64,000 nt of DNA, from the IMG/VR virus record IMGVR_UViG_3300005965_000002, positions 62,001 through 126,000 of that record. One strand, given 5' to 3'. Below, in pieces: positions 32,374-48,134 of the stretch. The notes below the pieces were generated by a model. That model saw nothing but the letters and a program-made list of their open reading frames with translations. It was not told the origin of the DNA and searched no databases. A program made the position numbers and the translations under genes. Within the stretch, counting starts at the first letter, position 1. Every line of letters starts with the position of its first letter.

Positions 32374-32797
32374 ATTTTTAATCCTTAGGTGCAGTGATCA
32401 ACACTATGAATATACTGGTTTGCTCATTCTTTTTAAAGCGAATAAATGACATTTTTTGAGAAAATAAGAATATTTACTATTTTATAAACTGTATACTCGT
32501 TATTAATTATGACTTTTACCTTACCTAATAATTTACCAGAACCCAATATACTTTTTTAAATCATTACCTTACATATACTTTTTTAAAATTCAAAAAATAA
32601 AACCTATATATTAGTAATTATATTAATAATTACTCTTCTATTGTGTTTCCTCGAAGAGGAAATACAGTAGTAGCTATAAGAAATAAAGCTTAAACAGATG
32701 GCGACAAAAAATTAGAAAAAAGTTAGTAATGAGTAGATCTTACTTTAATTATGAAAATTTGATAAGTATATTGGAATAGATGTAAAGAAATCCAGGA
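32374..32797. promoter_or_regulatory. AT-rich divergent intergenic region at the strand switch (promoters, possible origin)
   Basis: Genes diverge here. Two ATATACTTTTTTAAA repeats, inverted repeat 32613-32634, hairpin 32638-32670, TTTGATAAGTATATTG at 32758. Confidence 0.6.
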
Positions 32798-33483: not shown

Positions 33484-33520
33484 AGAAACTCTGTTTCGGC
33501 GGGGTGCGTTAATCCCCTCG
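33169..33520 (+). ncRNA. Candidate structured non-coding RNA
   Basis: GC-elevated intergenic segment with many stems, including GCC-GAAA-GGC; family not recognised. Confidence 0.35.
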
Positions 33521-33549
33521 ACAAAAATTTTAGGTGAGGAATGTAACTC

Positions 33550-34563
33550 ATGTATTTCAAAGCCATTAAAGGCCATGGGGAAAATATTGCCCTGTTTAAA
33601 AAATGGGTGGTAGAAAACTCATTTGAAGGTGTTTATCTTTTTACAGGACCTAAAGGGGTAGGGAAATTTACAACGGCTCGCCAGCTCTGTAAATACATCC
33701 TGTGTACCGGAGTAAAAGATGATACCTGTCGCTGTGGAAGCTGTAAAATTTTTCCAGGCACCCCTGATTATCTGGAGATTAGTAAGGGTGGAGGAGAAAC
33801 TATTAAAGTTGCTGACGCAGAAAGCATAGACAATTTTACTAGTCTTCTTCCTTATAAAAGTAGAAAAAGGGTTGTGTTGATTGATGATGCAGAGAATCTA
33901 AACGTAAAAGCGGCTAATCGTCTACTAAAGGTGTTAGAAGATATAAAGAGCCATATGATTGTCATTTTGGTTTCTAGTAACCCGCATCTAATTCTCCCAA
34001 CTATTAAATCACGCACAACAGAAATTCCTTTCAGTCGCTTATCTGTGGAGGAATCTTTAGAGGTATTGAAGGATAGGGGCATGTCCGTTGGAAAAATTAA
34101 AGATATGTCCAAGGCTATACCATATTTGAGGGAAAGCATGCCTCGGGCAGGTCTTAAGTACTATGAGTATTATAAGTATGTACCCTCCTTCCTGGAGCTA
34201 ATGGTTTCTTCCAGTGAAGACGAAGTCTTGAGTGCTATTAAGAGTATAGAAGAAAATGAAAACATTTCTTATTTTGCCGAAATGTTAGTTGAGTACCTAT
34301 CTGACATGCTAAGGATAATGTACGATGCCGAGAACAACATACATTTTGATGCAAAGTTTAAGGAAATAGAGAAATTGACATTTTCTTGGAACGACGATCT
34401 ATGTATAGCATTTGCTAACCGCCTGCGAAACGCAATATCTGATTATGATCGAGGAATAAATTTGAAGTTGTATAATAGAGTACGCACAGCAGTATCCTGG
34501 GTTTACATTCTTCTCCAGAATCATTTGGGTAGGAAACAAAGTAAAGCCAAGGTTGCTCCATAG
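33550..34563 (+). CDS. holB: Clamp loader delta-prime subunit
   Basis: GPKGVGK, C-rich Zn module, IDDAENLN..AANRLLK.LE, LPTIKSR. Confidence 0.88.
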   Translation: MYFKAIKGHGENIALFKKWVVENSFEGVYLFTGPKGVGKFTTARQLCKYILCTGVKDDTCRCGSCKIFPGTPDYLEISKGGGETIKVADAESIDNFTSLLPYKSRKRVVLIDDAENLNVKAANRLLKVLEDIKSHMIVILVSSNPHLILPTIKSRTTEIPFSRLSVEESLEVLKDRGMSVGKIKDMSKAIPYLRESMPRAGLKYYEYYKYVPSFLELMVSSSEDEVLSAIKSIEENENISYFAEMLVEYLSDMLRIMYDAENNIHFDAKFKEIEKLTFSWNDDLCIAFANRLRNAISDYDRGINLKLYNRVRTAVSWVYILLQNHLGRKQSKAKVAP

Positions 34564-34571
34564 AGGAAATA

Positions 34572-35480
34572 ATGCCTAATAAGTATTTGATTACTGCTAA
34601 AGATTCATATTTTGCTCGTGAAAAAATTTTTCAGATAGCTGAAAAACACGATATACCGGATCCAAAAATTTTTGTAGAGCACAAGGACTTCATAGAGGAA
34701 GCCTACCAGGGTGACCTTTTTAATGATAGTCAAAAAGCCCTGGCTTTAATACCTCTTACAACAGAATCCCTGCCCCACATACTTAGTCTTTGTAACCAGA
34801 CTACTTCTGATGTTCTAATTCTAGTAGATTACGGTGGTCTATCCAAGAATCGAAACTACACAAAGATCAAAGCTCTTTGTGAGATTGTCCCGGTTAAAAA
34901 GTTTAGTGATAAAGAATCGGTTTCCTGGACAGCGGCTACCCTTAAAAACCACGCCTTTTCTTATGAGCCGGGCGTACCCGAGTTAGTAGCTGCTTATAAA
35001 GGACCTGATGCTCAAGGTATAATGAATGAGATAAAAAAGTTGGATTTGTATTTAGACGATAAAAAAGTTACAAAAAAAGTTTGTAAAACAATCATTTCCC
35101 GTGTAGGAGAGGGTAAAATGTTTGATTTTACAGAGCACTTCTTTAGAAAGCACAAAAAGGAAGTTATTGAGGAGTTTAATTCATTTTCAGAATCTTCATA
35201 TATAGGTTTGGTGCATCTACTGATTTCTCAGTGTGACCGGATATATAAGGTAGCTGTTTATAGAGAGCAAAAGATGTCAGCGGAAGAAATAGCAGAACTG
35301 ATAGGTATACCCCCTTTTATCATAAAGACTAAGATTTTTACAGCGCTGAATGTTTTTAATAAGGTAAAATTATTAAAGTTAATGGATATGTTTAATGAGC
35401 TAGATAAGCTCTTAAGATCATCTCCATATAATAAGAGATTGATGTTCGAGTCCTTTTTGCTGAAATCCTTTAACTTGTAA
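34572..35480 (+). CDS. holA: Clamp loader delta subunit
   Basis: NEIKKLDLY, FDF, GIPPFIIK, L.ELDKLLRS pattern of HolA. Confidence 0.78.
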   Translation: MPNKYLITAKDSYFAREKIFQIAEKHDIPDPKIFVEHKDFIEEAYQGDLFNDSQKALALIPLTTESLPHILSLCNQTTSDVLILVDYGGLSKNRNYTKIKALCEIVPVKKFSDKESVSWTAATLKNHAFSYEPGVPELVAAYKGPDAQGIMNEIKKLDLYLDDKKVTKKVCKTIISRVGEGKMFDFTEHFFRKHKKEVIEEFNSFSESSYIGLVHLLISQCDRIYKVAVYREQKMSAEEIAELIGIPPFIIKTKIFTALNVFNKVKLLKLMDMFNELDKLLRSSPYNKRLMFESFLLKSFNL

Positions 35481-35551
35481 TAATCTTTTTATTATTAAGG
35501 TAAAGCGGAGACTACAGTGACTGTAAGAAGCATAAAAAAAGGGTATGCCGG

Positions 35552-35872
35552 ATGAAAACGGGTGATCGTGGGGTTATAATAGAGATGGATCTGGACCAAC
35601 AAAGGTTAAAAGAATTGGTTAGTGAAGCTCTTAGGATAATTTACGAATTTATAGAAGGTGAGTATGTATACACAAAAGAAGATATAATGGGACAACTTGA
35701 AAGAATTTTGTCCACGAACCGTGTATCAGTTCCTTTTGTTTTAAATATAGGAAGTAAAAAAATTCCTGACTTGGAGCTTAAAGTAGAGCCTAGGCGAAAA
35801 AGATTGCTCTGCCACACTAAGTTTAGAAAAAAGATAGCTGTAGTTAATCAGATTTTAAGGACAATGAAATGA
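35552..35872 (+). CDS. Hypothetical protein
   Basis: ORF downstream of a copy of the late-type motif. Confidence 0.5.
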   Translation: MKTGDRGVIIEMDLDQQRLKELVSEALRIIYEFIEGEYVYTKEDIMGQLERILSTNRVSVPFVLNIGSKKIPDLELKVEPRRKRLLCHTKFRKKIAVVNQILRTMK

Positions 35873-36351
35873 TAGCCGAACCTTTATTTATTAGGTTTGT
35901 GAATGGTAAGATATCATCTCCAGGTATTATCGAATCCTTTAGGAATAATGCTGTAAATGATAAGACAAGAGATATAATAGAAGCAGCTACTGCTTCCCCT
36001 CCTAATTTAAGCGTTTTTAGAAAAGATTTTAGGAATTTATTAACAGATGTTATTGATAAAGGTATTACCCAGGATTTCATTAACTACGTAAATAGCTATA
36101 TGAAGCCCTCCATTGAGGAATATGTGCAGGGTTCGAGTGGTGGAAGGGCTGGTGAAAATAGGACGATAGGCATAAAGGATGAGGACACACCTTGGGTAGA
36201 GGCGGTAGTCTGTTATAATTTGTGCCTCTACATAAAAGTTGAGGGGATTGAGAAGATTAAACAGTGTGCTGTATGTAAAAAATTTTTCTGCCATAAAACT
36301 AAGTATGCCAAGTATTGTAATGATTCATGTAAGAGTAGAGGTAGAGAATGA
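35869..36351 (+). CDS. Protein with C-terminal CGNR-like Zn finger
   Basis: IKQCAVCKKFF..AKYCNDSC. Confidence 0.6.
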   Translation: MIAEPLFIRFVNGKISSPGIIESFRNNAVNDKTRDIIEAATASPPNLSVFRKDFRNLLTDVIDKGITQDFINYVNSYMKPSIEEYVQGSSGGRAGENRTIGIKDEDTPWVEAVVCYNLCLYIKVEGIEKIKQCAVCKKFFCHKTKYAKYCNDSCKSRGRE

Positions 36352-36872
36352 GGAAGAACCTCGTATTAGCTTTTGGCTTGCAGAATACTTACATGCATCA
36401 GGATGGCGCTATATCTTTAGGAGATAAAGCAGAAGTTTATAGATTCAGGATTAAAGATTATATACAGTCTTTAAATCAGGAAGTGAATAAGTTATACTTA
36501 TTAAGAGAAGTACACGCTCCTAATGATACTTTTTTCTGCCGCGACCGTACTCATTCTTTAGTCGGGAGTAAAGATGTAGAGGTCCCTGAAGTATTTAAAT
36601 CATATTTTAAATTTATCATCAATACGACACGATATAACGCTTTATATAAGACACCATTAGAATCAGAGATATTTAAAATTGACCCGGAAAAAATAGTATT
36701 GATAGGATTTGAAACCCATACTAATATCCTTTTTACTGCTGAGGAGTTAAGAAATAGAGGATATAATGTAACGGTAATTGAGCCTCTAGCAGCATCCAGA
36801 GATTTGACCTTGCATGCCTCAGCGATATCTCTATTAAGTGACACACTGTCTGTTTCTATTAGTCAGGAGTAA
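36348..36872 (+). CDS. Isochorismatase/nicotinamidase-fold protein lacking the catalytic triad
   Basis: LQNTY..DGAI, E.H, H..VGS, RYNALYKT.LE, GFET..IL.TA..RGY.V.V. Asp, Lys and Cys are replaced by Gly, Thr and Asn. Confidence 0.8.
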   Translation: MRKNLVLAFGLQNTYMHQDGAISLGDKAEVYRFRIKDYIQSLNQEVNKLYLLREVHAPNDTFFCRDRTHSLVGSKDVEVPEVFKSYFKFIINTTRYNALYKTPLESEIFKIDPEKIVLIGFETHTNILFTAEELRNRGYNVTVIEPLAASRDLTLHASAISLLSDTLSVSISQE

Positions 36873-36875
36873 GTT

Positions 36876-37193
36876 ATGGTAGCAATATTTCAGTACAAAA
36901 TACAGTGTCCCTATTGCGATACAGAAATATCTTTAGTTGCGGAAGAATCGAATCCAATAATTTTTCCCTGCAAAGGATGTAGCAATCATATTGTAATAGA
37001 GGGTAATATCGTGTACAATGTTCCATCTAATGTAGCACAGAGAGTAATGAAAAGGGTTAAAGTCAAACAGTGTGGCCAGGTAGTGAAGTCAAAACTTAAC
37101 CCTAAACATGTCATAACTCAGAAAGAGATAGATGACTTGCACGAAATGCTTGAAAATAATAGTACTATAGAGGATTTTTTAAAACAACTTTAA
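36876..37193 (+). CDS. Zn-ribbon protein
   Basis: CPYC..CKGC. Confidence 0.6.
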   Translation: MVAIFQYKIQCPYCDTEISLVAEESNPIIFPCKGCSNHIVIEGNIVYNVPSNVAQRVMKRVKVKQCGQVVKSKLNPKHVITQKEIDDLHEMLENNSTIEDFLKQL

Positions 37194-37206
37194 AAAATAG
37201 TACATA

Positions 37207-37659
37207 ATGTATATATTAAGGTATATGGAAGATAAAGAACTTGACGGAAAACTGGTATACCTTACAATCCATTTTGAAAATTGGTTAAAACAGGTAAATC
37301 CTGCATTTAACGTCCCTATGGCTAATAGGTTAGCTAAGGTGATTAAAGTCTTCGATTGGGATACAGAAGAGGGTCAGATACTGCTAGCCGAGAGGGAAAA
37401 GACTGGTAAGTGGAAAAATCTAGATCCCAAAGACTTTAAATTTGTCCTTAAGGTATACTACCCCGAATTAGTCTTAAAAGGCAAAGTCAGAGGCTTCTCC
37501 GCCCAGGAGCTTGCTTGTAGGTATTACCCGGGCAAGGATATAACTATGTTTGAGCCGCTGCCAGATTCCCTAGTAAAAGAATTAGTGCGACAAGAAAAAA
37601 ACATACTGAAGGTAGAAAAAAGAAATGTATCTGGATCCGTTCGTAAGAAGAGCAAATGA
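37207..37659 (+). CDS. Hypothetical protein
   Basis: ORF in operon; start may be the downstream MEDKE. Confidence 0.55.
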   Translation: MYILRYMEDKELDGKLVYLTIHFENWLKQVNPAFNVPMANRLAKVIKVFDWDTEEGQILLAEREKTGKWKNLDPKDFKFVLKVYYPELVLKGKVRGFSAQELACRYYPGKDITMFEPLPDSLVKELVRQEKNILKVEKRNVSGSVRKKSK

Positions 37660-38317
37660 AGCTATTTTTCGATACGAGGAACCTTTAGAATATCTAAACG
37701 ACAGAGGAATAACAAAAGACGAAATAAGAAAATATTCTTTAGGTTACTTGAATATTGCCAATATAAAAGATGATGAAACCGAAGAATACAAAAGATTTAA
37801 AGAACAGACCTACAATTTTAGGGCCCTCGAAAAAAAGTTACTGATTCCCTTAAAAAATATTCTCGGTAAAGTGAATGGTGTCATTACCAGGGACTTGAAA
37901 GAAAAACGATACAAACAGTTTTTCTTGAAAGAAGCAAAGGATATAGGCACCTTTTTTGGATTGTATGAGGCTCTGCCGGAAATATGTAAGCAGAGGAAAG
38001 TCTTCGTTCACGAGGGAGCGATAGACGCGATTTCTTTTGCGAAAGTTTTTCCAAATAGTATTTCTGTACTAACTTCTCGAATTAACGAATGCCAATACGA
38101 GACATTGCGTTTTTTCGCTGATACGATTATCTTAGTTTTCGATGAGGATAGCCCGGGTAAGCACGGCGTAGATACAATGTATAAACTGTTTGGTAAGAAA
38201 CATCTTTATACAGTTTCGATTGGGTTTAACGATTCAAATGCATGCTTACAAAGAATGGGGCTCGAATCTTTTAAAAGATATATGAGGAACAAAGTCCCTC
38301 TTTTATTAAGAAATTAA
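37625..38317 (+). CDS. DnaG-type primase catalytic core (TOPRIM)
   Basis: YLNDRGIT, IPLKN..G, VHEGAIDAIS, FDEDSPG; no Zn-binding domain. Confidence 0.82.
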   Translation: MYLDPFVRRANEAIFRYEEPLEYLNDRGITKDEIRKYSLGYLNIANIKDDETEEYKRFKEQTYNFRALEKKLLIPLKNILGKVNGVITRDLKEKRYKQFFLKEAKDIGTFFGLYEALPEICKQRKVFVHEGAIDAISFAKVFPNSISVLTSRINECQYETLRFFADTIILVFDEDSPGKHGVDTMYKLFGKKHLYTVSIGFNDSNACLQRMGLESFKRYMRNKVPLLLRN

Positions 38318-38343
38318 TATTAATAGATAATAAGGAAACTTAC

Positions 38344-39699
38344 ATGTCGGGTACAAAGTATCGTCCATTAGATTTTAATAGCGTATTGGGATTGGATTCT
38401 ATCAAGCTTATTCTCCAAAGAATAATTGATAGAAAGGAATTCGATCCCGCTTACTTATTCAGCGGTGACTTTTCTACTGGAAAAACTACCCTGGGAAGAA
38501 TATTCGTTCGGAGTGTCTTCTGCACCAACCGTAAAAAGGATATGTCCCCATGTAATGAGTGCTCGTCTTGTAAAGACTTTTTATCAGAGCGCCACCCCGG
38601 TTATATTGAGATTGATGCAGCTAATAATGGATCAAAGGAAAAAATAAAAGAGATCAGAGAAAAGCTTTCGTACGAGTCTGTAACAAGCAGGATATTTATT
38701 TTATTTGATGAATGTCATAATATTAGTAAAGAAGGAAACGACGCATTACTTAAGGAGTTAGAGAAAGACAGGGATAACGTACATTTTATTTTTTGCACCA
38801 CAGAATTAGATAAGATGCCCCCGCCTTTAAGATCGAGATGCATACAATTTGAAATACACCAGCCTACTGAAGAAAATATACGTAAAAAGTTAGAGTTTAT
38901 TTGTAAGAAGGAAAATATTAATTATGAGCTTGAGGCTTTAAGATTAATAGTTCAGTCCACCGGCAGGCATTACCGTGACTCTGAGAATAAGCTTAGACAA
39001 GTATCTTTCTTAGGGGATATATCTCTTGAGAATACTAAAAAAGTAACGTGTGTGTACGAAGAAGAAATAGCAAGGATGTTAATTTATCTTTCAGATGATG
39101 TAAACATTGCTATGGAAATTTGTGATTACTTAGTAGAAAGAATGAATGTAAAAAATATCTATCAGACAATACTTAGACTCATAGTAGATGGTATTAAGCT
39201 GCTGCAGGGTGACATGGAAGTTGATAACTCAGCTATGTCGTATATGAATGATTTAGTACGGCAATACGGAGATTCGTTATATGAAATGCTAGATTTCATA
39301 TTATCAAAAGGAAGATTTACAGATTTAACATTTCTCCAATCCGACCTCTTATTAATGCACTATAAATTCCTCAGATGTCAATTCGATTCAAAGGCACTCG
39401 CGCCACAAGCCGCATCAGTATCAGCACCAAATAAAGATCAAGATCAAAAAATAGTATCAAGAAATAAGATGGAAAAATTAAAACAAGCAGGATCCTCTTG
39501 GGAACGTGCTGAGATGATGCGGAAATTACGTAATGAAAAAAATAAGACAAAGAAAGATGATAGAGTAGAAGAAGCCGTATCAAAGGCATGGGGTCCTGAA
39601 GTGGATTCTTTTGGGACAGAGTCGGTGTTTAAAAGGGAGATATCTCCTACTGACTTTATGAAAAAAATTGGAGGAGCTCTGGATGATAACAAGATCTAG
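38344..39699 (+). CDS. dnaX: Clamp loader gamma/tau subunit
   Basis: KYRP..F, G..STGKTT, PCNECSSC, EIDAA, DECH, LLKELE, SRC, G.YRD. Confidence 0.92.
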   Translation: MSGTKYRPLDFNSVLGLDSIKLILQRIIDRKEFDPAYLFSGDFSTGKTTLGRIFVRSVFCTNRKKDMSPCNECSSCKDFLSERHPGYIEIDAANNGSKEKIKEIREKLSYESVTSRIFILFDECHNISKEGNDALLKELEKDRDNVHFIFCTTELDKMPPPLRSRCIQFEIHQPTEENIRKKLEFICKKENINYELEALRLIVQSTGRHYRDSENKLRQVSFLGDISLENTKKVTCVYEEEIARMLIYLSDDVNIAMEICDYLVERMNVKNIYQTILRLIVDGIKLLQGDMEVDNSAMSYMNDLVRQYGDSLYEMLDFILSKGRFTDLTFLQSDLLLMHYKFLRCQFDSKALAPQAASVSAPNKDQDQKIVSRNKMEKLKQAGSSWERAEMMRKLRNEKNKTKKDDRVEEAVSKAWGPEVDSFGTESVFKREISPTDFMKKIGGALDDNKI

Positions 39700-40243
39700 T
39701 AGAGCCCCTAAGAATAAGGGTATGGATCTTTCACATAAGTACAAAGGACCCGGAAATTGGTTAATAATACGAATTAAAGAAGGTTGTGAATTATCTGAGA
39801 ATTTTGATTTAATAGAGAGAGAATTAAATCTAATCTTAGAAAGCGATACTGAATATTTTATCCCAGCGTATGTGGAAAAGGTTGAAGATCAGTATATACC
39901 TATAGTTCTTTTCGAGGGGTATGTTTTTGTGAGGTGTGCTCATTGCTCATGTGATTCATCAAGTATATCATGCCTCGATGGGCCATTAGTAGTTAATAAG
40001 AGTATACAGTACGCTAGAAATAGGGACATTAATAATTTTAAGGACAAGCTTAATAAGCAGATACAGGATATGATCCCTAAGAAAGGGCAACTAATAGTTC
40101 CTAAAGTCGGTACCTTTAAAAACTTGGAGGGTACCGTAATTTCTGTGAATCGTAAAAAAAGAACCGCTAAGGCGATATTTAAGCAGGCATCAAGAGTCGT
40201 ATCAGCCTATATAAACGTAATAAATCTTGAAATTATAGATTAG
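39668..40243 (+). CDS. NusG/RfaH-like transcription factor (NGN+KOW)
   Basis: YFIP..LFEGYVFV (NGN), KGQ.I....GTFKNLEGTVISVN (KOW); true start is likely 39683 or 39722. Confidence 0.78.
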   Translation: MEELWMITRSSRAPKNKGMDLSHKYKGPGNWLIIRIKEGCELSENFDLIERELNLILESDTEYFIPAYVEKVEDQYIPIVLFEGYVFVRCAHCSCDSSSISCLDGPLVVNKSIQYARNRDINNFKDKLNKQIQDMIPKKGQLIVPKVGTFKNLEGTVISVNRKKRTAKAIFKQASRVVSAYINVINLEIID

Positions 40244-40250
40244 GAAAGAC

Positions 40251-41198
40251 ATGAAAGCTTACTTTATTATTGATGGAAATAACTTGGCTCACCGGGCACA
40301 CAACAGCCATTTTGACTTGAAGAAGGCAAATGGGGATCCTTCCGGTATGGTTTACGGATTTATGAGAATATTGATCTCTTTAAAAAAGAAGTACAGAGCT
40401 TTCAAATTTATTGTTGTGTGGGATAATAGGCCGGATAAAAAGTATGAGCTAAAACCCGATTATAAAGCTGGTAGATCTAGACTACCCACAAAGGTATTTG
40501 ACCAAGTAGGTGAAATAAAGTTGATATTAAGTAGGTGCGGGGTGGATCAGTACGAAAAGAGAGGGGAAGAGGCAGATGATGTAATAGCAACTTTGGTGCG
40601 CAGGTTTAAAGACGAAGGTTCTAAGGTATACGTATATAGTAACGATAAGGATCTCCTACAGCTAGTTGAGGATGGAAAAGTTACAGTATACAGGCCTAAG
40701 GTAGGAAATACCCCGGAAAAGTTTTTTGATGAAGAAGCTGTGAAGGAGAAATTTAACGTATCTCCAAAAAAATTAGCTCTATATCGTAGCTTCGACGGGG
40801 ATTCAAGTGATAATATATCAGGAGTTCCAAGGGTACGTAGGAAACTAATAGCAAGTATTGTGTCTAAGCAATCATCTCTCGCGGATATATTTAATAGTAT
40901 TCACGATGATGCGGACATAAAGAAAATGTTAAGCGAAAAAGAATACGAAGCTATAAATAAGCATCTGGAAACCGCTGCAATAAATCTTAAGATAATTGAG
41001 CTGAATCAGTTTTTAGAAGATATAGATAAGACAGAGGCTCAGTATTCGGTGGAAGAGGTATCAAAGATACTTAGTGACTACGAAATTAAATCTATAGACG
41101 CAGAAAATGTCATAGATTTATTTAAGACATCTGTGAATATTAAATTCACTGAGCCTAAGCAAGCTATCAAGCTTGAAACCTATTCCCTCTTTGATTAA
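40251..41198 (+). CDS. 5'-3' exonuclease / flap endonuclease (PolA N-terminal-like)
   Basis: IDGNN..R, YKAGR, EADDVIATL, SNDKDLLQL, GDSSDNISGV. Confidence 0.93.
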   Translation: MKAYFIIDGNNLAHRAHNSHFDLKKANGDPSGMVYGFMRILISLKKKYRAFKFIVVWDNRPDKKYELKPDYKAGRSRLPTKVFDQVGEIKLILSRCGVDQYEKRGEEADDVIATLVRRFKDEGSKVYVYSNDKDLLQLVEDGKVTVYRPKVGNTPEKFFDEEAVKEKFNVSPKKLALYRSFDGDSSDNISGVPRVRRKLIASIVSKQSSLADIFNSIHDDADIKKMLSEKEYEAINKHLETAAINLKIIELNQFLEDIDKTEAQYSVEEVSKILSDYEIKSIDAENVIDLFKTSVNIKFTEPKQAIKLETYSLFD

Positions 41199-41211
41199 CA
41201 GGGGAGGACAT

Positions 41212-41838
41212 ATGAAGCATAGCGTATGTCGTAGTATGGATCCTTTTGAGATACAGAGCAGATATTCATCTGAAGATTATTCTTTCTTTAGCTTTAAAGA
41301 AAGCTCATTTTGTTTAGATGATTTTGAACCGTTTATTGATAAGCTGCCTCGTAGAGAAAAAGATCTAATTGAAATGTACTACAAAAGGCAAAAAAAGCAG
41401 AAAGAAATAGCGGAGTTTTTTAATGTGACCCAGGGCGCTGTTTCTCATAGGCTCTCTAGAGCAAGAAAAAGATTAAAATTTTTGAGGGATATGCCCAAAG
41501 CTACAGGTAATCTCGAAGAAGATTTATCCACACATTTTACTGATTTTGAGATTGATATCATAAAATATATGATAGAGACTACGTGTCAGTCTAAAACTGC
41601 TGATATACTCAACAAGAAGCACGGGCTAAAAGGTAAAGAGAAGATGACGCAAGTTAAAGTAAGACACAAGTTTGATAGAGCAATATCAAAGATAAATAAC
41701 CTTAAGAAGAAAAACCCGGAACTCAATGTATACTTTGAACTTACGAAGTATGTACAGAAAAATCCGTATATGCTGCACGAGGTAATTTTGCCGCATTTCG
41801 ATAGAGGCTATAAGGTAAACTATAAAGGTGTTTTCTAA
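41212..41838 (+). CDS. Sigma-70 region-4-like HTH protein (tandem HTH)
   Basis: LPRREKDLIEMYY..QKEIAEFFNVTQGAVSHRLSRA; a second similar HTH follows; GGAGG RBS before ATG 41212. Confidence 0.75.
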   Translation: MKHSVCRSMDPFEIQSRYSSEDYSFFSFKESSFCLDDFEPFIDKLPRREKDLIEMYYKRQKKQKEIAEFFNVTQGAVSHRLSRARKRLKFLRDMPKATGNLEEDLSTHFTDFEIDIIKYMIETTCQSKTADILNKKHGLKGKEKMTQVKVRHKFDRAISKINNLKKKNPELNVYFELTKYVQKNPYMLHEVILPHFDRGYKVNYKGVF

Positions 41839-42189
41839 TGAGTAGGGAAAGTGGGGGCGGTTCTTCAGTCACAGAGGTAACTGGTACGGCCCAGAGGACT
41901 CCTATGAAGAAGTTGTTAATAAATTTTATTCAAAAAACCATAGGCTACCAGACAGTGTTACCTATCCCGTTTACGCAAAAGTTAGAGTGAGTGATGATAA
42001 GAAGTTACTGAGTTGTGAGAGGAATTTTAAGATAGAAAATCAGATGAAAAAAACTCTACCTTTAGTGGTACAAAAGATCAGAAATAAATAAAGTTTAGAT
42101 ATAATTATCTATTAATACATATCCTCCATTAGAATTTGGGAGCTTTGCAGTAAAATTCTGAAAAAGCTAGTTCTAATGGAGGTTTTCTT

Positions 42190-42594
42190 TTGTATAAGAG
42201 TTTAGCTAGTGTAATTAGAAGAATCGCAGCTACTATCGATAACCCCGATTCTGCCTACCAAAACATACCCTACTACCAACCGAGTACAGATATATCTGAT
42301 ATAGGGACTAAAGAGGAGATACAGGACGGACCTCCTTCTCTTTATACAAAACACTTTGATAAGAAAAAGTTTTTGGATACAGTTTACCAGGGACCTAACC
42401 CCCCGGTAACTGATGTTCTTATAAAGGATAGAGAAAGGGCTAACATTAACCCTGGTGATCCTATACAGAATTTGAATGGAGACCCTACTAGGAATCCTAA
42501 TCAAAGTCCTAATGAGAAGTATTTTGAAGACGACTTTGATAGAGATACTATCGGTTTTAATCCGGGAGAAAAAAAAGACTATTATATACCTTAA
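42190..42594 (+). CDS. Hypothetical protein, first of head module
   Basis: GGAGG RBS, TTG start, late-type motif at 42102. Confidence 0.6.
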   Translation: MYKSLASVIRRIAATIDNPDSAYQNIPYYQPSTDISDIGTKEEIQDGPPSLYTKHFDKKKFLDTVYQGPNPPVTDVLIKDRERANINPGDPIQNLNGDPTRNPNQSPNEKYFEDDFDRDTIGFNPGEKKDYYIP

Positions 42595-42604
42595 GGTGGC
42601 GAAT

Positions 42605-42946
42605 ATGGAAAGCAAATTTGAAGAAGCTGTAAAAAGAATGAACAGTAAACTCGCTGGTGAGGAAGACTACAATAAGTCTGTAGTTAATAACCTATATCAG
42701 TGCCTGAGTGAAGGGTTGTCTCCAAAGAAGATGGCTTCGAAGGTAGCTGGTAAGGGAGCTATTAATAACAAAAGCGCTTCCATAAAAATTTCCAGTTTAG
42801 CGGATATGTATAACTTCGATAGGGTCGCTAATGACGTTCTGGTTCATAAGTCTAATAAAGATTTATGGGCTATTGAAGCCGATGATCAAGGTGAGGTGCG
42901 TATAACAAGACTTTTTGATAACAATGGAGAACCCCTTAGGGTTTAA
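42605..42946 (+). CDS. Hypothetical head-module protein
   Basis: Start at MESKF; LVHKSNKDLW; KxAS motifs. Confidence 0.6.
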   Translation: MESKFEEAVKRMNSKLAGEEDYNKSVVNNLYQCLSEGLSPKKMASKVAGKGAINNKSASIKISSLADMYNFDRVANDVLVHKSNKDLWAIEADDQGEVRITRLFDNNGEPLRV

Positions 42947-42961
42947 GCAGTGGAGGACTAA

Positions 42962-43603
42962 ATGTCTAAAAGAATTAGAATGACTGAGAAAGTAGCTGCT
43001 GGACCTAAGGCTAAGAAAGATATACAGGATAATGGTAGGCAGACTGATGGTTTTAGTTATGATAAGTCACATGCTAAAACTTTACAGAAAGTCCTCCATA
43101 ATTTAAATGTAGCCTTAGGTACTCAGATAGCAGCTATGAAGGATTTGGCTATGCTCAGGGGTTCTGATGTTACTCCTGATGGCAAACTGGGGGGACGTGG
43201 GTTTGTTATGGAGTTTAGAGAAATGAAGTCTCTTATTAACGAATCCATTAATAATCTTTCTGATATTACTGACTCAATAGGTGACGAGCTAACAAACCCT
43301 AAATGGGGGTTGAGTAAAAATCAGGTAAATAAGATAGAAAAAGAGAAAGATAAGGTCCAGGATGAGGTTGAGGAAGTACAGGAAGAGATTAAAGAAAAAT
43401 CAGAAGACGATGAGGATTTAAGCCTCGATGATCTTAGAACTAACCAACCTAAAGAATCTGAAGAAATAAGCCCAAAGGACGTGAAAGATTCTAGTTATGT
43501 AGAGTCCGTGAGAAAATATAAAGAGATGTTAGAAGATCCAAATAAGAAAGATAAAGTGGCTGCAGCATTAAGAAGATCAATCCAGGCAAACCTTCTACGA
43601 TAG
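42962..43603 (+). CDS. Hypothetical head-module protein
   Basis: PDGKLGGRGFV core and acidic tail. Confidence 0.6.
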   Translation: MSKRIRMTEKVAAGPKAKKDIQDNGRQTDGFSYDKSHAKTLQKVLHNLNVALGTQIAAMKDLAMLRGSDVTPDGKLGGRGFVMEFREMKSLINESINNLSDITDSIGDELTNPKWGLSKNQVNKIEKEKDKVQDEVEEVQEEIKEKSEDDEDLSLDDLRTNQPKESEEISPKDVKDSSYVESVRKYKEMLEDPNKKDKVAAALRRSIQANLLR

Positions 43604-43614
43604 GAGAATATAAA

Positions 43615-45537
43615 ATGTCTTCACTTGGCGATATTTCCGGTTTCATGAAAGACTCCGGGGCCAAAGTCCCTGATTTGGACTGGCTCCAATTAGATGTTAA
43701 TAATAAGGACAATATTCCTGTCCCTATGAATGTTGAAATTGTTCCTCAGCTTGAAGAAGCGTGGGGACACGATAAAGTTGCTGGTACTACTCATCTGATA
43801 GAAAATCAGTCAGCTACCTACAACCCTTCTTTAGAGAAGAAGGCATCCGATGAAGATGTTAAAAAGGTAGTTGATGCAGCTAAGATAGAAATCATGAGGG
43901 GATCACTTGGTAAGGAACTAACCGAGAAACTAGGTAGCCAGTTCCCTCAAGAAGTAATAGTAGCTGCTAAGGATGAGCTGAAAAAGGTAGCTTCAGAGCA
44001 GGGACTTTTAGGAAGTGTCTACATAGACATCAGTCCTTTTAATTCATGTGCTGAGGCATCTAGAGTTTTGGGTCATAATAAGATTCGAATGGCTAGATAT
44101 GTTGTGGGAGAGCCCAAGAGGCATGTTTGCTCTTCTCATGCTACCGGAGTCTGTAAGGAACTCAAGAAAAAAGTTATTAGCAGCATGGAATATGATGAGG
44201 CTGTTTTAAATGAGTATACTACTCATTTAAAAATAGCGGGACTATTGAGCGCCGATGAAAAAGTTGTTAGTAGGGAAGGCCTGCGTAACGCTATCATAGC
44301 GTCAAAAATGCCTGCTAATAAAAAACAGGAACCTCAGAAAAAACAAGATAGTTCTGAGACTCAAATTGATGCTAGCAAACTTGATGAAAGTTTTGCCAAG
44401 CATCTTGAAAAAGAAGCAGCTGATATCCGTAAGTCTTATGAGTCAGATCGTTTTGAAGAAGCAAGACCTATAGTCGCTTTTATACAGAATGAAATGCTTA
44501 AGGGTAAGATCGGGAATTCTTTAAAAGAGTCAATTCAGAAGAATTTCCCACCGGATACCATTGAGAAGTTTTCTGCTGAGATTAAAAAGATCGCGTCCTT
44601 GCAGGGATTGATGGGTAATGTTTACGTGGATCTTGCTTATTATCCAAATGCTGAAGAAGCCGTAAAGTGTATTAAAACAGCGTCTACTAACCCAGCTTAT
44701 CTGATTAACACCAGACCTACTAATGAATTCGATAATAAGCTGGAAGTAGTAGCTAAGGCTACAGGGTGTCAGATTCTACCTAGAAATGGTGGTATAGATA
44801 AGAAGGTAGCTCATAGCTATATTGATGATCTTGCCTTTTCTGATAAGATTTCATTTGAGCTTTCAAAGGATCTTAAAAATAAGGTTGAGGCCGGAGAAAA
44901 TGTGTTGGCTATAATTAGAAATGCTTTTTTGGCCACACAGCAGCACACCAAGGCTGTTAAGGAAGGTGGAGTGCAAGGGTACTTTGCCTCAATGAATACA
45001 AGTAAATATAAGGATACAGAAAAAATTAAGACAGCCGCATATAAATCTATGGAAGCCGGTATTGAGTATGATAAGGTTTCTGCAAAGATGGCTGAGCTTA
45101 TGCCTACTACAGAAGCACTAAGTGCTGCTCGTACAGTTCTCGGTAGCATGAAAGAGGTTAAAGCTGATATCCTTAATAAGTGCAGCACTGATAAGTACCC
45201 CCTGGCTAAAGATGCTTCCATAGTGCAGGGTAGTAAATGTGCAAGTTGCATCCTCTCTACTGGTAATTCTTGCCTAAAACAGGAAAGAAAATTTGCCGGT
45301 AAAGAGAACATGGATAAACCCGTTGTGAACATCGACCCAAAAACATCGAAAGTCATTTACGATGAAAACCCTGACGTAAAAAGGGCGGACATAAATTCTG
45401 AATTTGAGATGTACGGAGATTTCGGTTCCGGAATGAATATCACCCTGAATGAAATGCGTGATCAGAAAAAAGAAGCAGGACTTGATATTGAAAACGGGTA
45501 CAACATGAATGGCCTGGATGCTGCCTTGTCCGACTAA
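43615..45537 (+). CDS. Putative head protein with internal duplication
   Basis: KKVASEQGLLGSVYID and KKIASLQGLMGNVYVD repeats; Cys clusters. Confidence 0.6.
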   Translation: MSSLGDISGFMKDSGAKVPDLDWLQLDVNNKDNIPVPMNVEIVPQLEEAWGHDKVAGTTHLIENQSATYNPSLEKKASDEDVKKVVDAAKIEIMRGSLGKELTEKLGSQFPQEVIVAAKDELKKVASEQGLLGSVYIDISPFNSCAEASRVLGHNKIRMARYVVGEPKRHVCSSHATGVCKELKKKVISSMEYDEAVLNEYTTHLKIAGLLSADEKVVSREGLRNAIIASKMPANKKQEPQKKQDSSETQIDASKLDESFAKHLEKEAADIRKSYESDRFEEARPIVAFIQNEMLKGKIGNSLKESIQKNFPPDTIEKFSAEIKKIASLQGLMGNVYVDLAYYPNAEEAVKCIKTASTNPAYLINTRPTNEFDNKLEVVAKATGCQILPRNGGIDKKVAHSYIDDLAFSDKISFELSKDLKNKVEAGENVLAIIRNAFLATQQHTKAVKEGGVQGYFASMNTSKYKDTEKIKTAAYKSMEAGIEYDKVSAKMAELMPTTEALSAARTVLGSMKEVKADILNKCSTDKYPLAKDASIVQGSKCASCILSTGNSCLKQERKFAGKENMDKPVVNIDPKTSKVIYDENPDVKRADINSEFEMYGDFGSGMNITLNEMRDQKKEAGLDIENGYNMNGLDAALSD

Positions 45538-45573
45538 GCAGCATTCAGCGTTTATATAACATAGGAGACATAT

Positions 45574-46260
45574 ATGCCAGATGATTCAATGGATCTCAAC
45601 TTAGACGAGATTCTTGAAACTGCTGAATTTGAGGATGAAAAAAATCCTATTGATATAGTAGAGAGAGAAAAGGGCGAAACAGAAGATATTAAGGATCTTG
45701 AATCCGAGATAGGTAAGGTACAAGAAAGCCATGATAAGGGTGAAGAGAGAGAATTAATAAACGAGCCCCAGGATCTTTTAGCTATTAATGTAAAAGGGCA
45801 CAGCCAGCTACAGCAGCTTATAGAAGACCCTTTAGAGAATGATGATCTATATCAGGCAATAGATAATGACGACCCCGCTCCGGCATTACTAAGGAGCGCC
45901 ATGAAGGAGTATGCAGAAGAGATAGCATACTTAAAGGCATGGAGGAAACATAATTATAAGTTAGACGCCGATATGACATCCGAGATATCTGATAAAAGGA
46001 TGAAAGCATTATTTAATCTTGTAAAGGCCGTACTTGAAAGAGAAAAGATAGCCAGTAAGCAAAGTAAAGGTAAGATAGATTTTCACGGAGAAAATTTTGC
46101 AAAGGTTTTTCAGTTTTTTCTCCAAGAGGTTCAGGAGACTTTTAAGACTGTAAATATACCAGAGCAGTATCAAAAGATCTTCTTTCCGCAGTTAGCAAAA
46201 CGACTGGACGGTTTTGAGAAAAAGGCGGAGAGGATATACTACGGGAAATCTCCTAGATGA
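45574..46260 (+). CDS. Putative terminase small subunit
   Basis: Helical protein overlapping the start of terL; positional inference only. Confidence 0.4.
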   Translation: MPDDSMDLNLDEILETAEFEDEKNPIDIVEREKGETEDIKDLESEIGKVQESHDKGEERELINEPQDLLAINVKGHSQLQQLIEDPLENDDLYQAIDNDDPAPALLRSAMKEYAEEIAYLKAWRKHNYKLDADMTSEISDKRMKALFNLVKAVLEREKIASKQSKGKIDFHGENFAKVFQFFLQEVQETFKTVNIPEQYQKIFFPQLAKRLDGFEKKAERIYYGKSPR

Positions 46261-48134
46261 GCATAGCTGAAATATGCGCTAACATGTCATCCGAAGAGGG
46301 TGTCGATACCAGTAAAATTCTGCATAAAGATGCTATGGAGTTTATTACTGCTCCGTGGGGTCTTGGGATGGGAACTGTACCAGGTGTTCCTTCGTTATAT
46401 CCCGCACAGAGATTTATCATTAAAATGTACTACGGGTTGGAATTAGATAATGGTTCTAATCGTGATATTATAATAAAAGATCAGTTCAACGAAGAAGAAA
46501 TTTACAGATTTAATGAGAAAGAGTATCAGGATTATCTTTTCTCCGAAGGTCGTATAAATAAGGATACTGAAAATAACTGGTTTACTGATCTTACCTTGGT
46601 TATGGGCAGGAGGGCCGGAAAAACTATGCTCACTTCTTGTATAATTTCTTATGAATTATACAAGCTTCTTTCGTATTATTGCCCTCAGGAATTTTACGGT
46701 ATAGTTCCTGAGTCTGAGATACGAGTGACGTGTGTAGCTACAAGCAAAGAAACAGCGGGTGAGCTCTTTAATGCGATTACTGGAAATATTGAGAGATCAG
46801 AGTTTTTTAGAAAGTTTAGAGGAAAACCTACTAAGCAGAGCATGTCTCTAAGAACACAGAGAGACTTGGATAAATATGGTGAGACCGGTAGAGCTACTCT
46901 TTCTATTCATGTGGCTCCATGCAGCGCTAAGGGTCTTCGCGGACATAATAACATTATTGTGGCTCTCGACGAGGTCGCATTCTTTTTTGAGGATGAGAAA
47001 AAAGAAGGAAAAAATTCAGCAAGCGACAGAAACGACCGAGCTATTTATAAAGCTGTTACCCCTTCTGTAGCTAAGTTCCAGGGAAAAGACGGTAAGCCCC
47101 ATGGTAAAATTATTTGTATATCGTCTCCTAATACAAAATCCGGTAAGTTCTTTGAATTGTATGAAAACTCATTTGGTGAGAATACAAAAAATCAGCTTAT
47201 GATACAAGCCCCTACGTGGGAGCTTGATAGTAACTTATCCTCAGAGTTTTTACATAATGAGTATAACTCAAATAGATCTAATTTTTATGTTGAGTACGGA
47301 GCACAGTTTAGTGATAGAGTAAAGGCATGGATAGAAGATCCAATAATAGTACGCCAAAATATAGTACCGGGTCTTATATACATAAAAAGAAGTAGTAACA
47401 GAATACCTCATTTTATGGGAATAGATATAGGACTAAAAGAGGACGGAACCGCTATTTGTATATGCCATCATGAAGAAGAGCTGGTAAACGGGGTACGTGA
47501 GAATTTAATCCAAGTAGACGACTGCCAGGTAAGGTTCGCACATGATGAGGGTAAAAAACATTTCACCCCGCAGGAGTTAGCTGACTGGCTCCATAGTTTT
47601 ACTAATAATTTCTTCATAGTCAAAGCTTTAATGGACCAATATTATGGGATGGGGATTATACCTCTTTTAGAAGATAAAGGCTTAAGACAGTTTGAGTATA
47701 GAATTTTTACTGAGACGCTGAATTCTCAGATTTATCAAAACCTACTCACTCAAATGATATCTTCAAATCTTAGGATTCCTGAAGAAGAAAGAGTGGTTGA
47801 CGGTAAAATTGAAAAAGATTCAGCTCTTGTGCAGGAGCTTCTTTCATTACAAGCTTATCAGAAGAGCAAGTATATAGTAAAGGTAGAAGCCCCGGATAGA
47901 AAAAACGCACACGATGACCGTTCAGATGCTTTCGCTCGTGCGGTCCTTCTAGCAACTGAATACAAAATTAGAGGTAAGGGAGGAAAGGTGGCTGCAGCTA
48001 GCTCAGGAAGAGCTCACAGCCATACTTTACTAAGATCGCTGGAAAGACGAAAAATTGATCTAAACAGACCCACAAGAGGTAGAATGCCATCCAGGACGGG
48101 AATGGGAGCAGGCTCTTTGGGGTTAAGACGATAG
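46257..48134 (+). CDS. terL: Terminase large subunit
   Basis: GRRAGKT, LRG, VALDE, ISSP, EYGAQF, GIDIG..D and HDD motifs. Confidence 0.92.
   Translation: MSIAEICANMSSEEGVDTSKILHKDAMEFITAPWGLGMGTVPGVPSLYPAQRFIIKMYYGLELDNGSNRDIIIKDQFNEEEIYRFNEKEYQDYLFSEGRINKDTENNWFTDLTLVMGRRAGKTMLTSCIISYELYKLLSYYCPQEFYGIVPESEIRVTCVATSKETAGELFNAITGNIERSEFFRKFRGKPTKQSMSLRTQRDLDKYGETGRATLSIHVAPCSAKGLRGHNNIIVALDEVAFFFEDEKKEGKNSASDRNDRAIYKAVTPSVAKFQGKDGKPHGKIICISSPNTKSGKFFELYENSFGENTKNQLMIQAPTWELDSNLSSEFLHNEYNSNRSNFYVEYGAQFSDRVKAWIEDPIIVRQNIVPGLIYIKRSSNRIPHFMGIDIGLKEDGTAICICHHEEELVNGVRENLIQVDDCQVRFAHDEGKKHFTPQELADWLHSFTNNFFIVKALMDQYYGMGIIPLLEDKGLRQFEYRIFTETLNSQIYQNLLTQMISSNLRIPEEERVVDGKIEKDSALVQELLSLQAYQKSKYIVKVEAPDRKNAHDDRSDAFARAVLLATEYKIRGKGGKVAAASSGRAHSHTLLRSLERRKIDLNRPTRGRMPSRTGMGAGSLGLRR

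What the first reader, a model, noticed from the sequence alone, without database searches (positions are those of the whole stretch)
39668..41838. Phage NusG paralog and a region-4-only sigma-like protein at the replication/morphogenesis boundary
Seen: an NGN+KOW protein and a protein with two region-4-like HTHs but no recognisable region 2, just before the late-type motif at 42102. Established: NusG paralogs (RfaH, LoaP) antiterminate long operons. Inference: host RNA polymerase is redirected by an appropriator-like factor plus a processivity factor for the >20-kb head operon.
Basis: partly seen in the sequence, partly recalled or inferred. Interest (0 to 1): 0.6.

Follow-up and report, generated by a model that had tools for sequence, protein, structure and literature searches.

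The report
Huge-phage NusG paralog and tandem-HTH regulator
A roughly 470-kb phage with no detectable RNA polymerase gene carries a conserved pair of transcription genes, a NusG-type elongation factor and a sigma-region-4-derived two-HTH DNA-binding protein, just upstream of a structured, terminator-like leader that opens its packaging/head operon; the pair probably helps reprogram the host polymerase, which no experiment has yet tested.

Summary
Gene 39683-40243 encodes a true NGN+KOW (NusG-fold) protein. Gene 41212-41838 encodes a protein with a real sigma-70 region-4 domain, a second diverged HTH domain and no region 2.

The window lies in a 258-kb fragment of a huge phage from hypersaline-lake and microbial-mat metagenomes. 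A 98%-complete relative shows no RNA polymerase gene, so host polymerase is probably used.

The block clamp loader / NusG-like / FEN / sigma4-HTH2 / head genes is syntenic in 10 related loci. In a distant 485-kb phage the two transcription genes are directly adjacent.

The motif at 42102 is real: 24 sites with at most one mismatch, all intergenic, against 0.45 expected. It is a genome-wide phage promoter, not a late-specific one. It contains two TAAT repeats 11 bp apart.

A conserved, covarying hairpin follows it (-27 kcal/mol, z -5). The hairpin sequesters the ribosome-binding site and ends in a U-run.

Best reading: the NusG paralog is an elongation/antitermination factor, and sigma4-HTH2 is a sequence-specific DNA-binding regulator of these promoters. 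"Sigma appropriator" is not shown. I rate it a new variant of known kinds, of moderate interest.

The parts
38344..39699 (+). Clamp-loader AAA+ subunit (451 aa). It is the upstream neighbour and overlaps the NusG-like start by 17 nt.
   Evidence: Pfam DNA_pol3_delta2 8.4e-26; phrog_5846 4.8e-50. Same position in 10 related loci.
39683..40243 (+). NusG-family paralog (186 aa): short basic N-terminal tail, NGN domain with the LFEGYVFV signature, then a KOW beta-barrel.
   Evidence: RBS GGAGG 7 nt before the ATG. AF2 pLDDT 85.7. Foldseek hits to NusG/Spt5/RfaH. Profile versus PDB NusG 1e-5. NCBIfam best matches UpxY 2.3e-5 and LoaP 2.8e-3, far below their cut-offs. Homologues P0130 and P0125 pass the Pfam NusG gathering score.
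40251..41198 (+). 5'-3' exonuclease / flap endonuclease (315 aa). A replication gene lying between the two transcription genes.
   Evidence: Pfam 5_3_exonuc_N 7.8e-41 and 5_3_exonuc 1e-8. Absent from this position in distant phage LR745208.1.
41212..41838 (+). Sigma4-HTH2 protein (208 aa): conserved acidic N-terminal peptide, sigma region-4 domain (residues ~36-97), second HTH domain (residues ~105-185), conserved C-terminal tail.
   Evidence: Pfam Sigma70_r4 4.3e-12. TIGR02937 48.5 bits, through region 4 only. AF2 pLDDT 77, C-domain >90. VIA Z 9-9.8 to sigma domain 4. More than 295 homologues of about 208 aa, mean column identity 67%. No Sigma70_r2.
41317..41502 (+). Coding region of the sigma region-4 domain (HTH1).
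41524..41766 (+). Coding region of the second HTH domain (HTH2), which has a 10-residue insertion in the turn.
   Evidence: Structural match to the G20C small-terminase HTH, Z 6.2.
41839..42101 (+). 262-nt spacer specific to this phage; relatives have 15-45 nt here. No significant RNA structure.
   Evidence: Fold z +0.9. Single copy in the genome. Comparison with relatives.
42102..42117 (+). Class-2 phage promoter motif (perfect match to TAATWATCTHTTAATA), with two TAAT repeats 11 bp apart.
   Evidence: 8 perfect and 24 one-mismatch sites in 258 kb, all intergenic, versus 0.45 expected. Same orientation as the downstream gene, about 55 nt upstream of starts. Same position in L010, L012, L013, L017, L019 and L020.
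42123..42182 (+). Conserved leader hairpin. Its 5' arm (CCTCC...) pairs with the Shine-Dalgarno GGAGG of the first head-operon gene. It is followed by TTTTCTTTT (42183-42191).
   Evidence: MFE -27.3 kcal/mol, z -5.0. 8 of 10 consensus pairs show compensatory changes across 7 phages. Strongest of 31 class-2 leaders. No Rfam match.
42190..42594 (+). First gene of the packaging/head operon (134 aa, TTG start), function unknown.
   Evidence: Homologues at the same position in L012, L013, L019 and L020.
46257..48134 (+). Large terminase. It marks the packaging module downstream.
   Evidence: phrog_2 3.7e-22.
35478..35493 (+). Weaker class-2-like site (2 mismatches) heading the run of genes 35552-41838 that includes both transcription genes.
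32730..32772 (+). Class-1 (sigma-70-like) promoter, TTTAAT-N18-GTATATT, heading the + strand gene run that leads into the flagged genes.
   Evidence: No strong + strand terminator between it and 41838.

Best explanation
The interval encodes two parts of a transcription-control set that is conserved across one clade of huge phages. These phages appear to lack their own RNA polymerase.

(1) The 186-aa protein is a specialised NusG paralog.
- Inferred from the established NusG/RfaH/LoaP mechanism: its NGN domain binds the beta' clamp helices of the host elongation complex. This makes transcription pause- and termination-resistant over the long, one-directional phage operons.
- Its most likely specific target is the conserved terminator-like hairpin plus U-run in the leader of the packaging/head operon.

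(2) The 208-aa protein is not a sigma factor.
- It is a monomeric DNA-binding regulator built from a sigma-region-4 HTH and a second, duplicated and diverged HTH.
- I propose that its two HTHs read the two TAAT repeats, spaced one helical turn apart, in the 16-bp class-2 promoter. It would thereby activate these promoters, which lack a -35 element.

Both genes lie in a gene run headed by a sigma-70-like (class-1) promoter, so they would be made before the class-2 units they serve.

Shown here: the folds, the family membership, the synteny, the motif statistics and the leader structure. Inferred: polymerase binding, antitermination, and which protein reads the motif.
For: - NusG fold and signature.
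- Region-4 domain without region 2.
- Second HTH.
- Conserved order clamp loader / NusG-like / FEN / sigma4-HTH2 / head genes in 10 loci. The two genes are directly adjacent in distant phage LR745208.1.
- Sigma4-HTH2 is the most conserved gene of the block (57-72% identity against 36-45% for the NusG-like protein), with invariant recognition helices.
- Class-2 motif: 24 sites, all intergenic, against 0.45 expected. The information peaks at the TAAT repeats at positions 1-4 and 12-15. The repeats are retained in the degenerate motif of relative G001.
- The phage's only complete sigma is sigma-A-like, which fits the class-1 promoters rather than class 2.
- The sigma4+C-domain module is fused to DNA methyltransferases in some relatives, and never to region 2.
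- No RNA polymerase genes detected. Intrinsic terminators are used.
- Leader hairpin is conserved with covariation.
Against: - There is no direct evidence of binding to polymerase or to DNA. The beta-flap complex prediction gave no answer.
- The NusG-like protein scores far below the curated cut-offs of NusG, RfaH, LoaP and UpxY.
- No strong internal terminators lie in the head operon, so the need for antitermination rests on the leader hairpin alone. That hairpin could instead act on translation or mRNA stability.
- The class-2 motif is much rarer and partly altered in G001, although the HTH helices are invariant.
- I did not survey other HTH proteins of the genome as candidate readers of the motif.
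- Only 55% of this genome is held.
- The transcription start is unknown, because no RNA runs exist.
Confidence: 0.45

Rival explanations
1. Sigma4-HTH2 is a polymerase-bound sigma-like subunit or sigma-4 surrogate. This is the first reader's 'appropriator', comparable to T4 AsiA/MotA or gp33, or to Thermus phage P23-45 gp39. Its region-4 domain would dock on the beta-flap tip and displace region 4 of the host sigma. That would switch RNA polymerase from -35-dependent (class-1 and host) promoters to the class-2 promoters, which lack a -35 element.
For: - Domain 1 is closest to genuine sigma region 4 (FliA/ECF type) and gives no LuxR/GerE hit.
- Class-2 promoters have no -35 element.
- The conserved acidic N-terminal peptide sits where a sigma linker would be.
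- Phage proteins that bind the flap and also antiterminate are known: gp39 (PMC3351154, abstract seen).
Against: - No region 2, and no partner carrying region 2, was detected.
- The complex prediction with the E. coli beta flap gave no answer, which is not evidence either way.
- DNA-methyltransferase fusions of the module suggest DNA targeting.
Confidence: 0.2
2. Sigma4-HTH2 is a DNA-binding protein with a role other than activating class-2 promoters. Examples are a repressor that shuts off early class-1 promoters, or a protein that marks sites on phage DNA.
For: - The HTH architecture, and fusions of the module to DNA methyltransferases.
- Structural likeness of the C-domain to recombinase DNA-binding domains.
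- The motif varies in G001 while the recognition helices do not.
Against: - Its fixed position next to a NusG paralog and directly upstream of the head-operon promoter, even in a distant clade.
- Its region-4 ancestry.
Confidence: 0.17
3. Sigma4-HTH2 is the small terminase subunit, an HTH protein that recognises the packaging site and is encoded at the head of the packaging module.
For: - Weak phrog_2538 small-terminase hit (E 0.012).
- HTH2 aligns with the G20C small-terminase HTH, Z 6.2.
- Its size and its position upstream of the packaging genes.
Against: - It lies 4.4 kb and five genes upstream of TerL.
- A 228-aa ORF (45574-46260) overlaps the TerL start and is the better candidate.
- The model shows no oligomerisation or beta-barrel domain.
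- It is separated from the operon by a promoter.
Confidence: 0.08
4. The leader hairpin is not an antitermination target. It would be a translational operator or a 5' stabiliser, and the NusG paralog would act generally, for example by excluding host NusG/Rho or coupling ribosomes, rather than at this site.
For: - The hairpin sequesters the Shine-Dalgarno sequence.
- Several other class-2 leaders also pair their Shine-Dalgarno sequence.
- The U-run doubles as the spacer between Shine-Dalgarno and start codon.
- RfaH is known to work by excluding NusG and recruiting ribosomes (PMC7819879).
Against: - The hairpin is by far the strongest of the class-2 leaders and its loop sequence is unique.
- Its shape (stem plus U-run) is terminator-like.
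Confidence: 0.35

Closest known systems
Specialised NusG paralogs (RfaH, LoaP, UpxY, TaA, ActX)
   Same: - Two-domain NGN+KOW architecture with the LF-GY-FV NGN signature.
- Encoded next to a long operon whose leader carries a structured, terminator-like element, as for LoaP and UpxY.
- The best NCBIfam matches are UpxY and LoaP.
   Different: - Phage-encoded.
- Scores are 4-7 times below every family's cut-off.
- A basic N-terminal tail, up to about 90 lysine-rich residues in homologues.
- No ops-like recruitment element was identified.
- The KOW domain is modelled as a beta-barrel, and no fold-switch evidence was sought.
Sigma-70 family region 4 (ECF / FliA type) and two-subunit or minimal sigmas (B. 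subtilis SigO-RsoA; T4 gp55/gp33). The named examples are cited from my own knowledge.
   Same: Domain 1 has the sequence and fold of sigma region 4. The protein is small and lacks part of a normal sigma.
   Different: - No region 2, either in the protein or in a detectable partner.
- Region 4 is N-terminal and followed by a second HTH.
- The module also occurs fused to DNA methyltransferases.
Monomeric two-HTH activators (MarA/SoxS/Rob type), cited from my own knowledge
   Same: One polypeptide with two HTHs could read two half-sites one helical turn apart in an asymmetric site of about 16-20 bp beside or overlapping the promoter.
   Different: There is no sequence or fold relationship to the AraC family. 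The binding geometry was not tested.
Phage takeover factors acting on sigma region 4 or the beta flap: T4 AsiA/MotA; Thermus phage P23-45 gp39 (PMC3351154)
   Same: The same proposed logic: switch host polymerase from -35-dependent promoters to promoters without a -35 element. In gp39 this is combined with antitermination.
   Different: No homology, and no evidence of flap or sigma binding here.
Other phage NusG-fold proteins (phrog_6386; BFVD entries annotated NusG/RfaH from uncultured Caudovirales)
   Same: Same fold. They show that phages occasionally carry NusG paralogs.
   Different: No detectable sequence match to any of 50,697 deposited phage genomes by tblastn. My literature searches found no experimental study of a phage NusG paralog.

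Membership tests
NusG/Spt5 superfamily | N-terminal NGN domain (alpha/beta fold) that carries the polymerase-binding surface. | tested here: met
   The AF2 model aligns with NusG, Spt5 and RfaH (E 1.4e-6 to 1e-3). The profile hits NusG in the PDB. LFEGYVFV signature present, with L, Y and F invariant.
NusG/Spt5 superfamily | C-terminal KOW beta-barrel. | tested here: met
   Strands 137-185 are modelled as a barrel. It matches the NusG C-terminal domain and uL24 KOW.
NusG/Spt5 superfamily | Passes the Pfam NusG (PF02357) gathering score. | tested here: not met
   19.2 bits against 22.2 for the window's protein. Homologues P0130 (25.7) and P0125 (24.3) do pass.
NusG/Spt5 superfamily | Binds the RNA polymerase clamp helices and modifies elongation. 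| not testable with these tools
   Needs biochemistry. I did not run a complex prediction for this pair.
RfaH / LoaP / UpxY (named NusG paralog families) | Passes the curated NCBIfam cut-off of the family. | tested here: not met
   UpxY 24.5 against 100 bits; LoaP 17.8 against 125; NusG 15.3 against 135.7.
Sigma-70 family sigma factor | Region 4 (HTH that reads the -35 element and binds the flap). | tested here: met
   Pfam Sigma70_r4 45.8 bits against a 24.1 cut-off. VIA Z 9-9.8.
Sigma-70 family sigma factor | Region 2 (binds core polymerase, recognises and melts the -10 element). | tested here: not met
   No Sigma70_r2 hit in the protein. The only region-2 hit in the genome is a separate sigma-A-like gene. 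Only about 35 residues precede region 4. None of the 104 relatives of the C-domain that I checked has region 2.
Sigma-70 family sigma factor | Binds core RNA polymerase. | tested here: inconclusive
   Complex prediction with E. coli beta 831-1057 returned 'no answer'.
Small terminase | HTH followed by an oligomerisation domain, encoded next to TerL. | tested here: not met
   The model shows no oligomerisation domain. Five genes and a promoter separate it from TerL.

The most novel reading that the evidence does not exclude
Sigma4-HTH2 is a minimal promoter-specificity subunit without region 2. It would dock on the host beta flap through its region-4 domain and, with its second HTH and conserved C-terminal tail, direct host RNA polymerase to compact 16-bp promoters that lack a -35 element. 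The adjacent NusG paralog would be loaded at the structured leader to carry polymerase through 15-30 kb operons. Together they would form a two-part takeover system that lets huge phages do without a polymerase of their own. The conserved C-terminal tail might also couple the factor to the phage sliding clamp, as in T4 late transcription.
Probability: 0.12. Interest if true: 0.8.

Novelty: new variant of a known kind. Interest (0 to 1): 0.5.

Why it matters
Little is known about how huge phages without their own RNA polymerase schedule hundreds of genes.

This locus offers a compact, testable system:
- one well-defined 16-bp promoter class;
- one conserved regulatory leader;
- two conserved candidate factors, which lie side by side even in distantly related huge phages.

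A phage-encoded NusG paralog would extend the 'specialised NusG paralog for a long foreign operon' principle from bacterial capsule, antibiotic and pilus operons to virion genes.

A tandem region-4 HTH family found so far almost only in viruses would be a new type of phage transcription regulator. It could also serve as an orthogonal promoter/factor pair for synthetic biology.

Tried and rejected
- **DNA and protein searches of 50,697 deposited phage genomes.** No DNA match and no match for the NusG-like protein. One distant match for sigma4-HTH2, in LR745208.1.
- **Complex prediction of sigma4-HTH2 (residues 28-208) with E. coli beta flap 831-1057.** The result was 'no answer' (score 0.00). 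It is not evidence either way, and the host is unknown.
- **Foldseek of the whole sigma4-HTH2 model against the PDB.** No hit at E <= 0.001, only region-4 fragments. VIA-wide was dominated by domain 1, so the fold of the C-domain is barely tested.
- **Family scans of the C-domain alone** (Pfam, NCBIfam): nothing.
- **Sigma-70 promoter and terminator consensus scans of 32000-51900.** Neither promoters (55 against 61.9 expected) nor terminators (16 against 11.1 +/- 2.8) stand clearly above the shuffles. My own scan found no strong + strand terminator inside the head operon, so the 'internal terminators' idea is rejected.
- **The exact class-2 motif and the local CGATCGGGTATATT repeat in relative G001.** Neither is genome-wide there. 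Only a degenerate class-2 variant was found.
- **The loop sequence CAGTAAAATT as a general recruitment element.** It is unique to this leader.
- **Rfam on the leader:** no match.
- **The 262-nt spacer as a structured RNA or repeat:** no.
- **Sequencing runs.** Only DNA assemblies from hypersaline-lake and microbial-mat metagenomes hold the stretch, with no RNA run. I therefore did not use read laying, and the transcript ends remain unknown.
- **Literature searches for phage-encoded NusG paralogs** found no dedicated study.


Full report
**Context**

The window is bases 62001-126000 of a 258,580-bp IMG/VR virus record that CheckV rates 55% complete. That implies a huge phage of roughly 470 kb. 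Near-identical DNA occurs in assemblies from hypersaline-lake and microbial-mat metagenomes; no RNA run holds it.

The left part of the window carries NAD-salvage, nucleotide and replication genes: ribonucleotide reductase, a helicase, a UvsX-like recombinase, a sliding clamp and clamp-loader subunits. From 42190 rightwards lie packaging and head genes:
- TerL at 46257-48134;
- a portal gene with an intein at 52696-56139;
- the prohead protease at 58685-60253.

The 'replication/morphogenesis boundary' is therefore real.

**What is in 39668-41838**

There are three tightly packed + strand genes, not two.

(a) *NusG-like gene, 39683-40243.* The ATG follows a GGAGG ribosome-binding site, and gene callers elsewhere chose the same 186-aa product.
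- Pfam NusG and KOW are both just below threshold (19.2 and 14.1 bits). It hits phrog_6386 'transcription antiterminator' at 2.8e-8.
- A profile of 17 homologues hits Aquifex NusG at 1e-5.
- The AF2 model (pLDDT 85.7) has an NGN alpha/beta domain and a KOW barrel. Its best PDB matches are all NusG, Spt5 or RfaH.
- The NGN hallmark LFEGYVFV and the KOW glycines are conserved.
- Among curated families it is nearest to UpxY and LoaP, but 4-7 times below their cut-offs.
- It is therefore a member of the NusG superfamily, but not of any named paralog family.
- Homologues carry lysine-rich N-terminal tails of up to about 90 residues.

(b) *5'-3' exonuclease/FEN, 40251-41198*.

(c) *Sigma4-HTH2 gene, 41212-41838.* The ATG follows GGGGAGG, giving 208 aa.
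- Residues ~36-97 are a bona fide sigma region 4: Pfam 4.3e-12, TIGR02937 above its cut-off but through region 4 only, and VIA Z 9-9.8 with rmsd 1.8-2.5 Å.
- There is no region 2.
- Residues ~105-185 form a second, confidently modelled helical HTH domain (pLDDT >90) with no family hit.
- The two domains align weakly but in register (hhalign E 0.0085).
- In the distant homologue of LR745208.1 the second HTH lacks a 10-residue loop and gives a sub-threshold Sigma70_r4 match (E 0.027).
- 'Two region-4-like HTHs' is therefore a fair description: firm for the first domain, tentative for the second.

**Family and conservation**

Sigma4-HTH2 has more than 295 close homologues of about 208 aa. Many lie on contigs of 200-470 kb. 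Mean column identity is 67%, and both putative recognition helices are invariant.

A profile of the C-domain, searched against 1.84 billion cluster representatives, found only 104 proteins.
- Most are 170-215 aa.
- About 16 are 380-605 aa. In these the sigma4+C-domain module follows an unrelated N-terminal region, and in two cases that region is a DNA methyltransferase.
- None of those checked has region 2.
- Atlas neighbours are almost all viral.

The gene order clamp loader / NusG-like / FEN / sigma4-HTH2 / g213 / g640 holds in all 10 related loci examined. Sigma4-HTH2 is the most conserved gene of the block. In LR745208.1 (485 kb, 33% identity) the NusG-like and sigma4-HTH2 genes overlap directly, with no FEN between them. 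This is the strongest evidence that the two are functionally linked.

**Polymerase**

No beta, beta' or T7-like RNA polymerase was detected in this fragment. No beta or T7-like polymerase was detected in a 98%-complete relative of 466,729 bp either. The control for the T7-like family was uninformative. Each genome has one complete sigma-A-like factor; the two are 39% identical. Strong canonical intrinsic terminators sit in intergenic regions. Host multisubunit polymerase is therefore the likely enzyme.

**Promoters**

Two classes emerged from k-mer enrichment in upstream regions.

*Class 1* is sigma-70-like: TTTAAA/TTTGAA, 17-18 bp, GTATATT. It lies mostly before tRNA genes, left-arm genes and minus-strand replication genes, and also at 32766 on the + strand.

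- There are 8 perfect and 24 one-mismatch sites, all intergenic in a genome that is 91% coding, against 0.45 expected.
- The sites share the orientation of the downstream gene and lie about 55 nt before the start codon.
- There is no conserved -35 element or other flank.
- The motif precedes head and tail genes, but also the ribonucleotide reductase gene, the replication gene run (35478, 2 mismatches) and many small left-arm genes. It is the phage's general promoter, not a late one.
- Its information peaks at two TAAT repeats 11 bp apart.
- The same motif follows the sigma4-HTH2 gene in six relatives.
- G001 keeps a rarer, degenerate form in which the TAAT repeats persist.

**Leader of the head operon**

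Five bases after the motif begins a hairpin (42123-42182), followed by TTTTCTTTT and the TTG start codon.
- MFE is -27.3 kcal/mol and z is -5.0.
- Its 5' arm pairs with the Shine-Dalgarno sequence.
- In seven phages, 8 of 10 consensus pairs show compensatory changes.
- It is the strongest of 31 class-2 leaders.
- Its loop sequence is unique in the genome, and Rfam has no match.
- It looks like a leader terminator or attenuator that doubles as a translational operator.
- I found no other strong + strand terminator between 42190 and 56519.

**Interpretation**

- By homology, the NusG paralog very probably binds elongating polymerase. The known specialised paralogs act on long operons through their leaders (PMC7819879). 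This operon has exactly such a conserved leader, so antitermination or anti-pausing there is the most economical model.
- Sigma4-HTH2 cannot be a conventional sigma. Its architecture and its methyltransferase fusions indicate a DNA-targeting module.
- The repeat structure of the class-2 motif fits a tandem-HTH reader, and the phage's only full sigma fits class 1 better.
- Nothing ties the protein to the motif directly. The flap-binding 'appropriator' model (T4 AsiA/MotA; P23-45 gp39, PMC3351154) remains open, since the single complex prediction gave no answer.
- A small-terminase role is unlikely on positional and structural grounds.

**Verdict**

The locus is a new variant of known kinds: a phage NusG paralog plus a tandem region-4 HTH regulator found so far almost only in viruses. 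It comes with a well-defined promoter and leader that make the idea directly testable.

Noticed in passing
window 52696-56139 (+): The portal gene (phrog_16240, 1.3e-34) is interrupted by an intein. Pfam finds Intein_splicing and a LAGLIDADG_3 homing endonuclease at residues ~213-669.
   Followed up: no
window 5986-9519 (+): The ribonucleotide reductase large subunit (1177 aa) carries an HNH-endonuclease-like insertion at residues ~330-520. It is probably another intein or homing element.
   Followed up: no
window 27102-30920 (-): A 1272-aa helicase (exonuclease V / Dda-like) has an internal segment (residues ~328-590) that matches terminase/primase-type PHROGs. This may be an inserted element or a fusion.
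   Followed up: no
L048 9685-11571 (LR745208.1): The clamp-loader gene of the distant huge phage is 628 aa. The match to the window's 451-aa protein is split in two (residues 4-124 and 119-369), which suggests an intein-like insertion.
   Followed up: no
window 3-5760 (-): A cluster of NAD+ genes: NAD synthetase, a nicotinamide phosphoribosyltransferase-like gene and a nucleotidyltransferase. NAD+ synthesis genes have been reported in gut jumbo phages (PMC11662467, title seen).
   Followed up: no
whole genome G000; in the window at 4636(-), 5793(-), 19560(-), 32415(-), 32551(-), 32766(+): A second, sigma-70-like promoter class (TTTAAA/TTTGAA, 17-18 bp, GTATATT) lies before tRNA genes and early-type genes. 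Its -10 core TAGTATATT is also the most enriched upstream word in relative G001. Region 32374-32797 is a divergent promoter region.
   Followed up: partly
G000:C1 sites 7813(-), 13352(+), 42359(-), 43766(-), 142418(+): Several other class-2 leaders begin with an anti-Shine-Dalgarno stretch that pairs with the ribosome-binding site (z < -2). About half of the 31 leaders have the Shine-Dalgarno sequence mostly paired in the MFE fold. This could be a recurring translational-control or mRNA-stability design.
   Followed up: partly
window 62999/63024, 11151/11184, 12129/12154; G000:C1 14480/14506, 41127/41155: Perfect GC-rich bidirectional intrinsic terminators lie in intergenic regions. Several + strand terminators sit immediately before a class-2 promoter, for example at window 68332 and 107383 (coordinates beyond the window, counted from its start).
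   Followed up: partly
G000:C1:128003-128392, just right of the window: A 693-aa open frame carries two weak Sigma70_r4-like matches (17.7 and 16.4 bits). It could be another HTH-repeat protein.
   Followed up: no
window 41839-42101: A 262-nt spacer between the sigma4-HTH2 gene and the promoter is present only in this phage; relatives have 15-45 nt. It holds a 50-aa ORF, has no significant RNA structure and is single-copy.
   Followed up: yes
window 45574-46260 (+): A 228-aa ORF with no family hit overlaps the TerL start codon. It is the best candidate for the small terminase.
   Followed up: no
window 18127-19290 (-): The phage encodes its own sliding clamp (phrog_947, 5.5e-13) as well as three clamp-loader-type genes (33550-34563, 34572-35480, 38344-39699). 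This matters if late transcription is clamp-coupled, as in T4.
   Followed up: no
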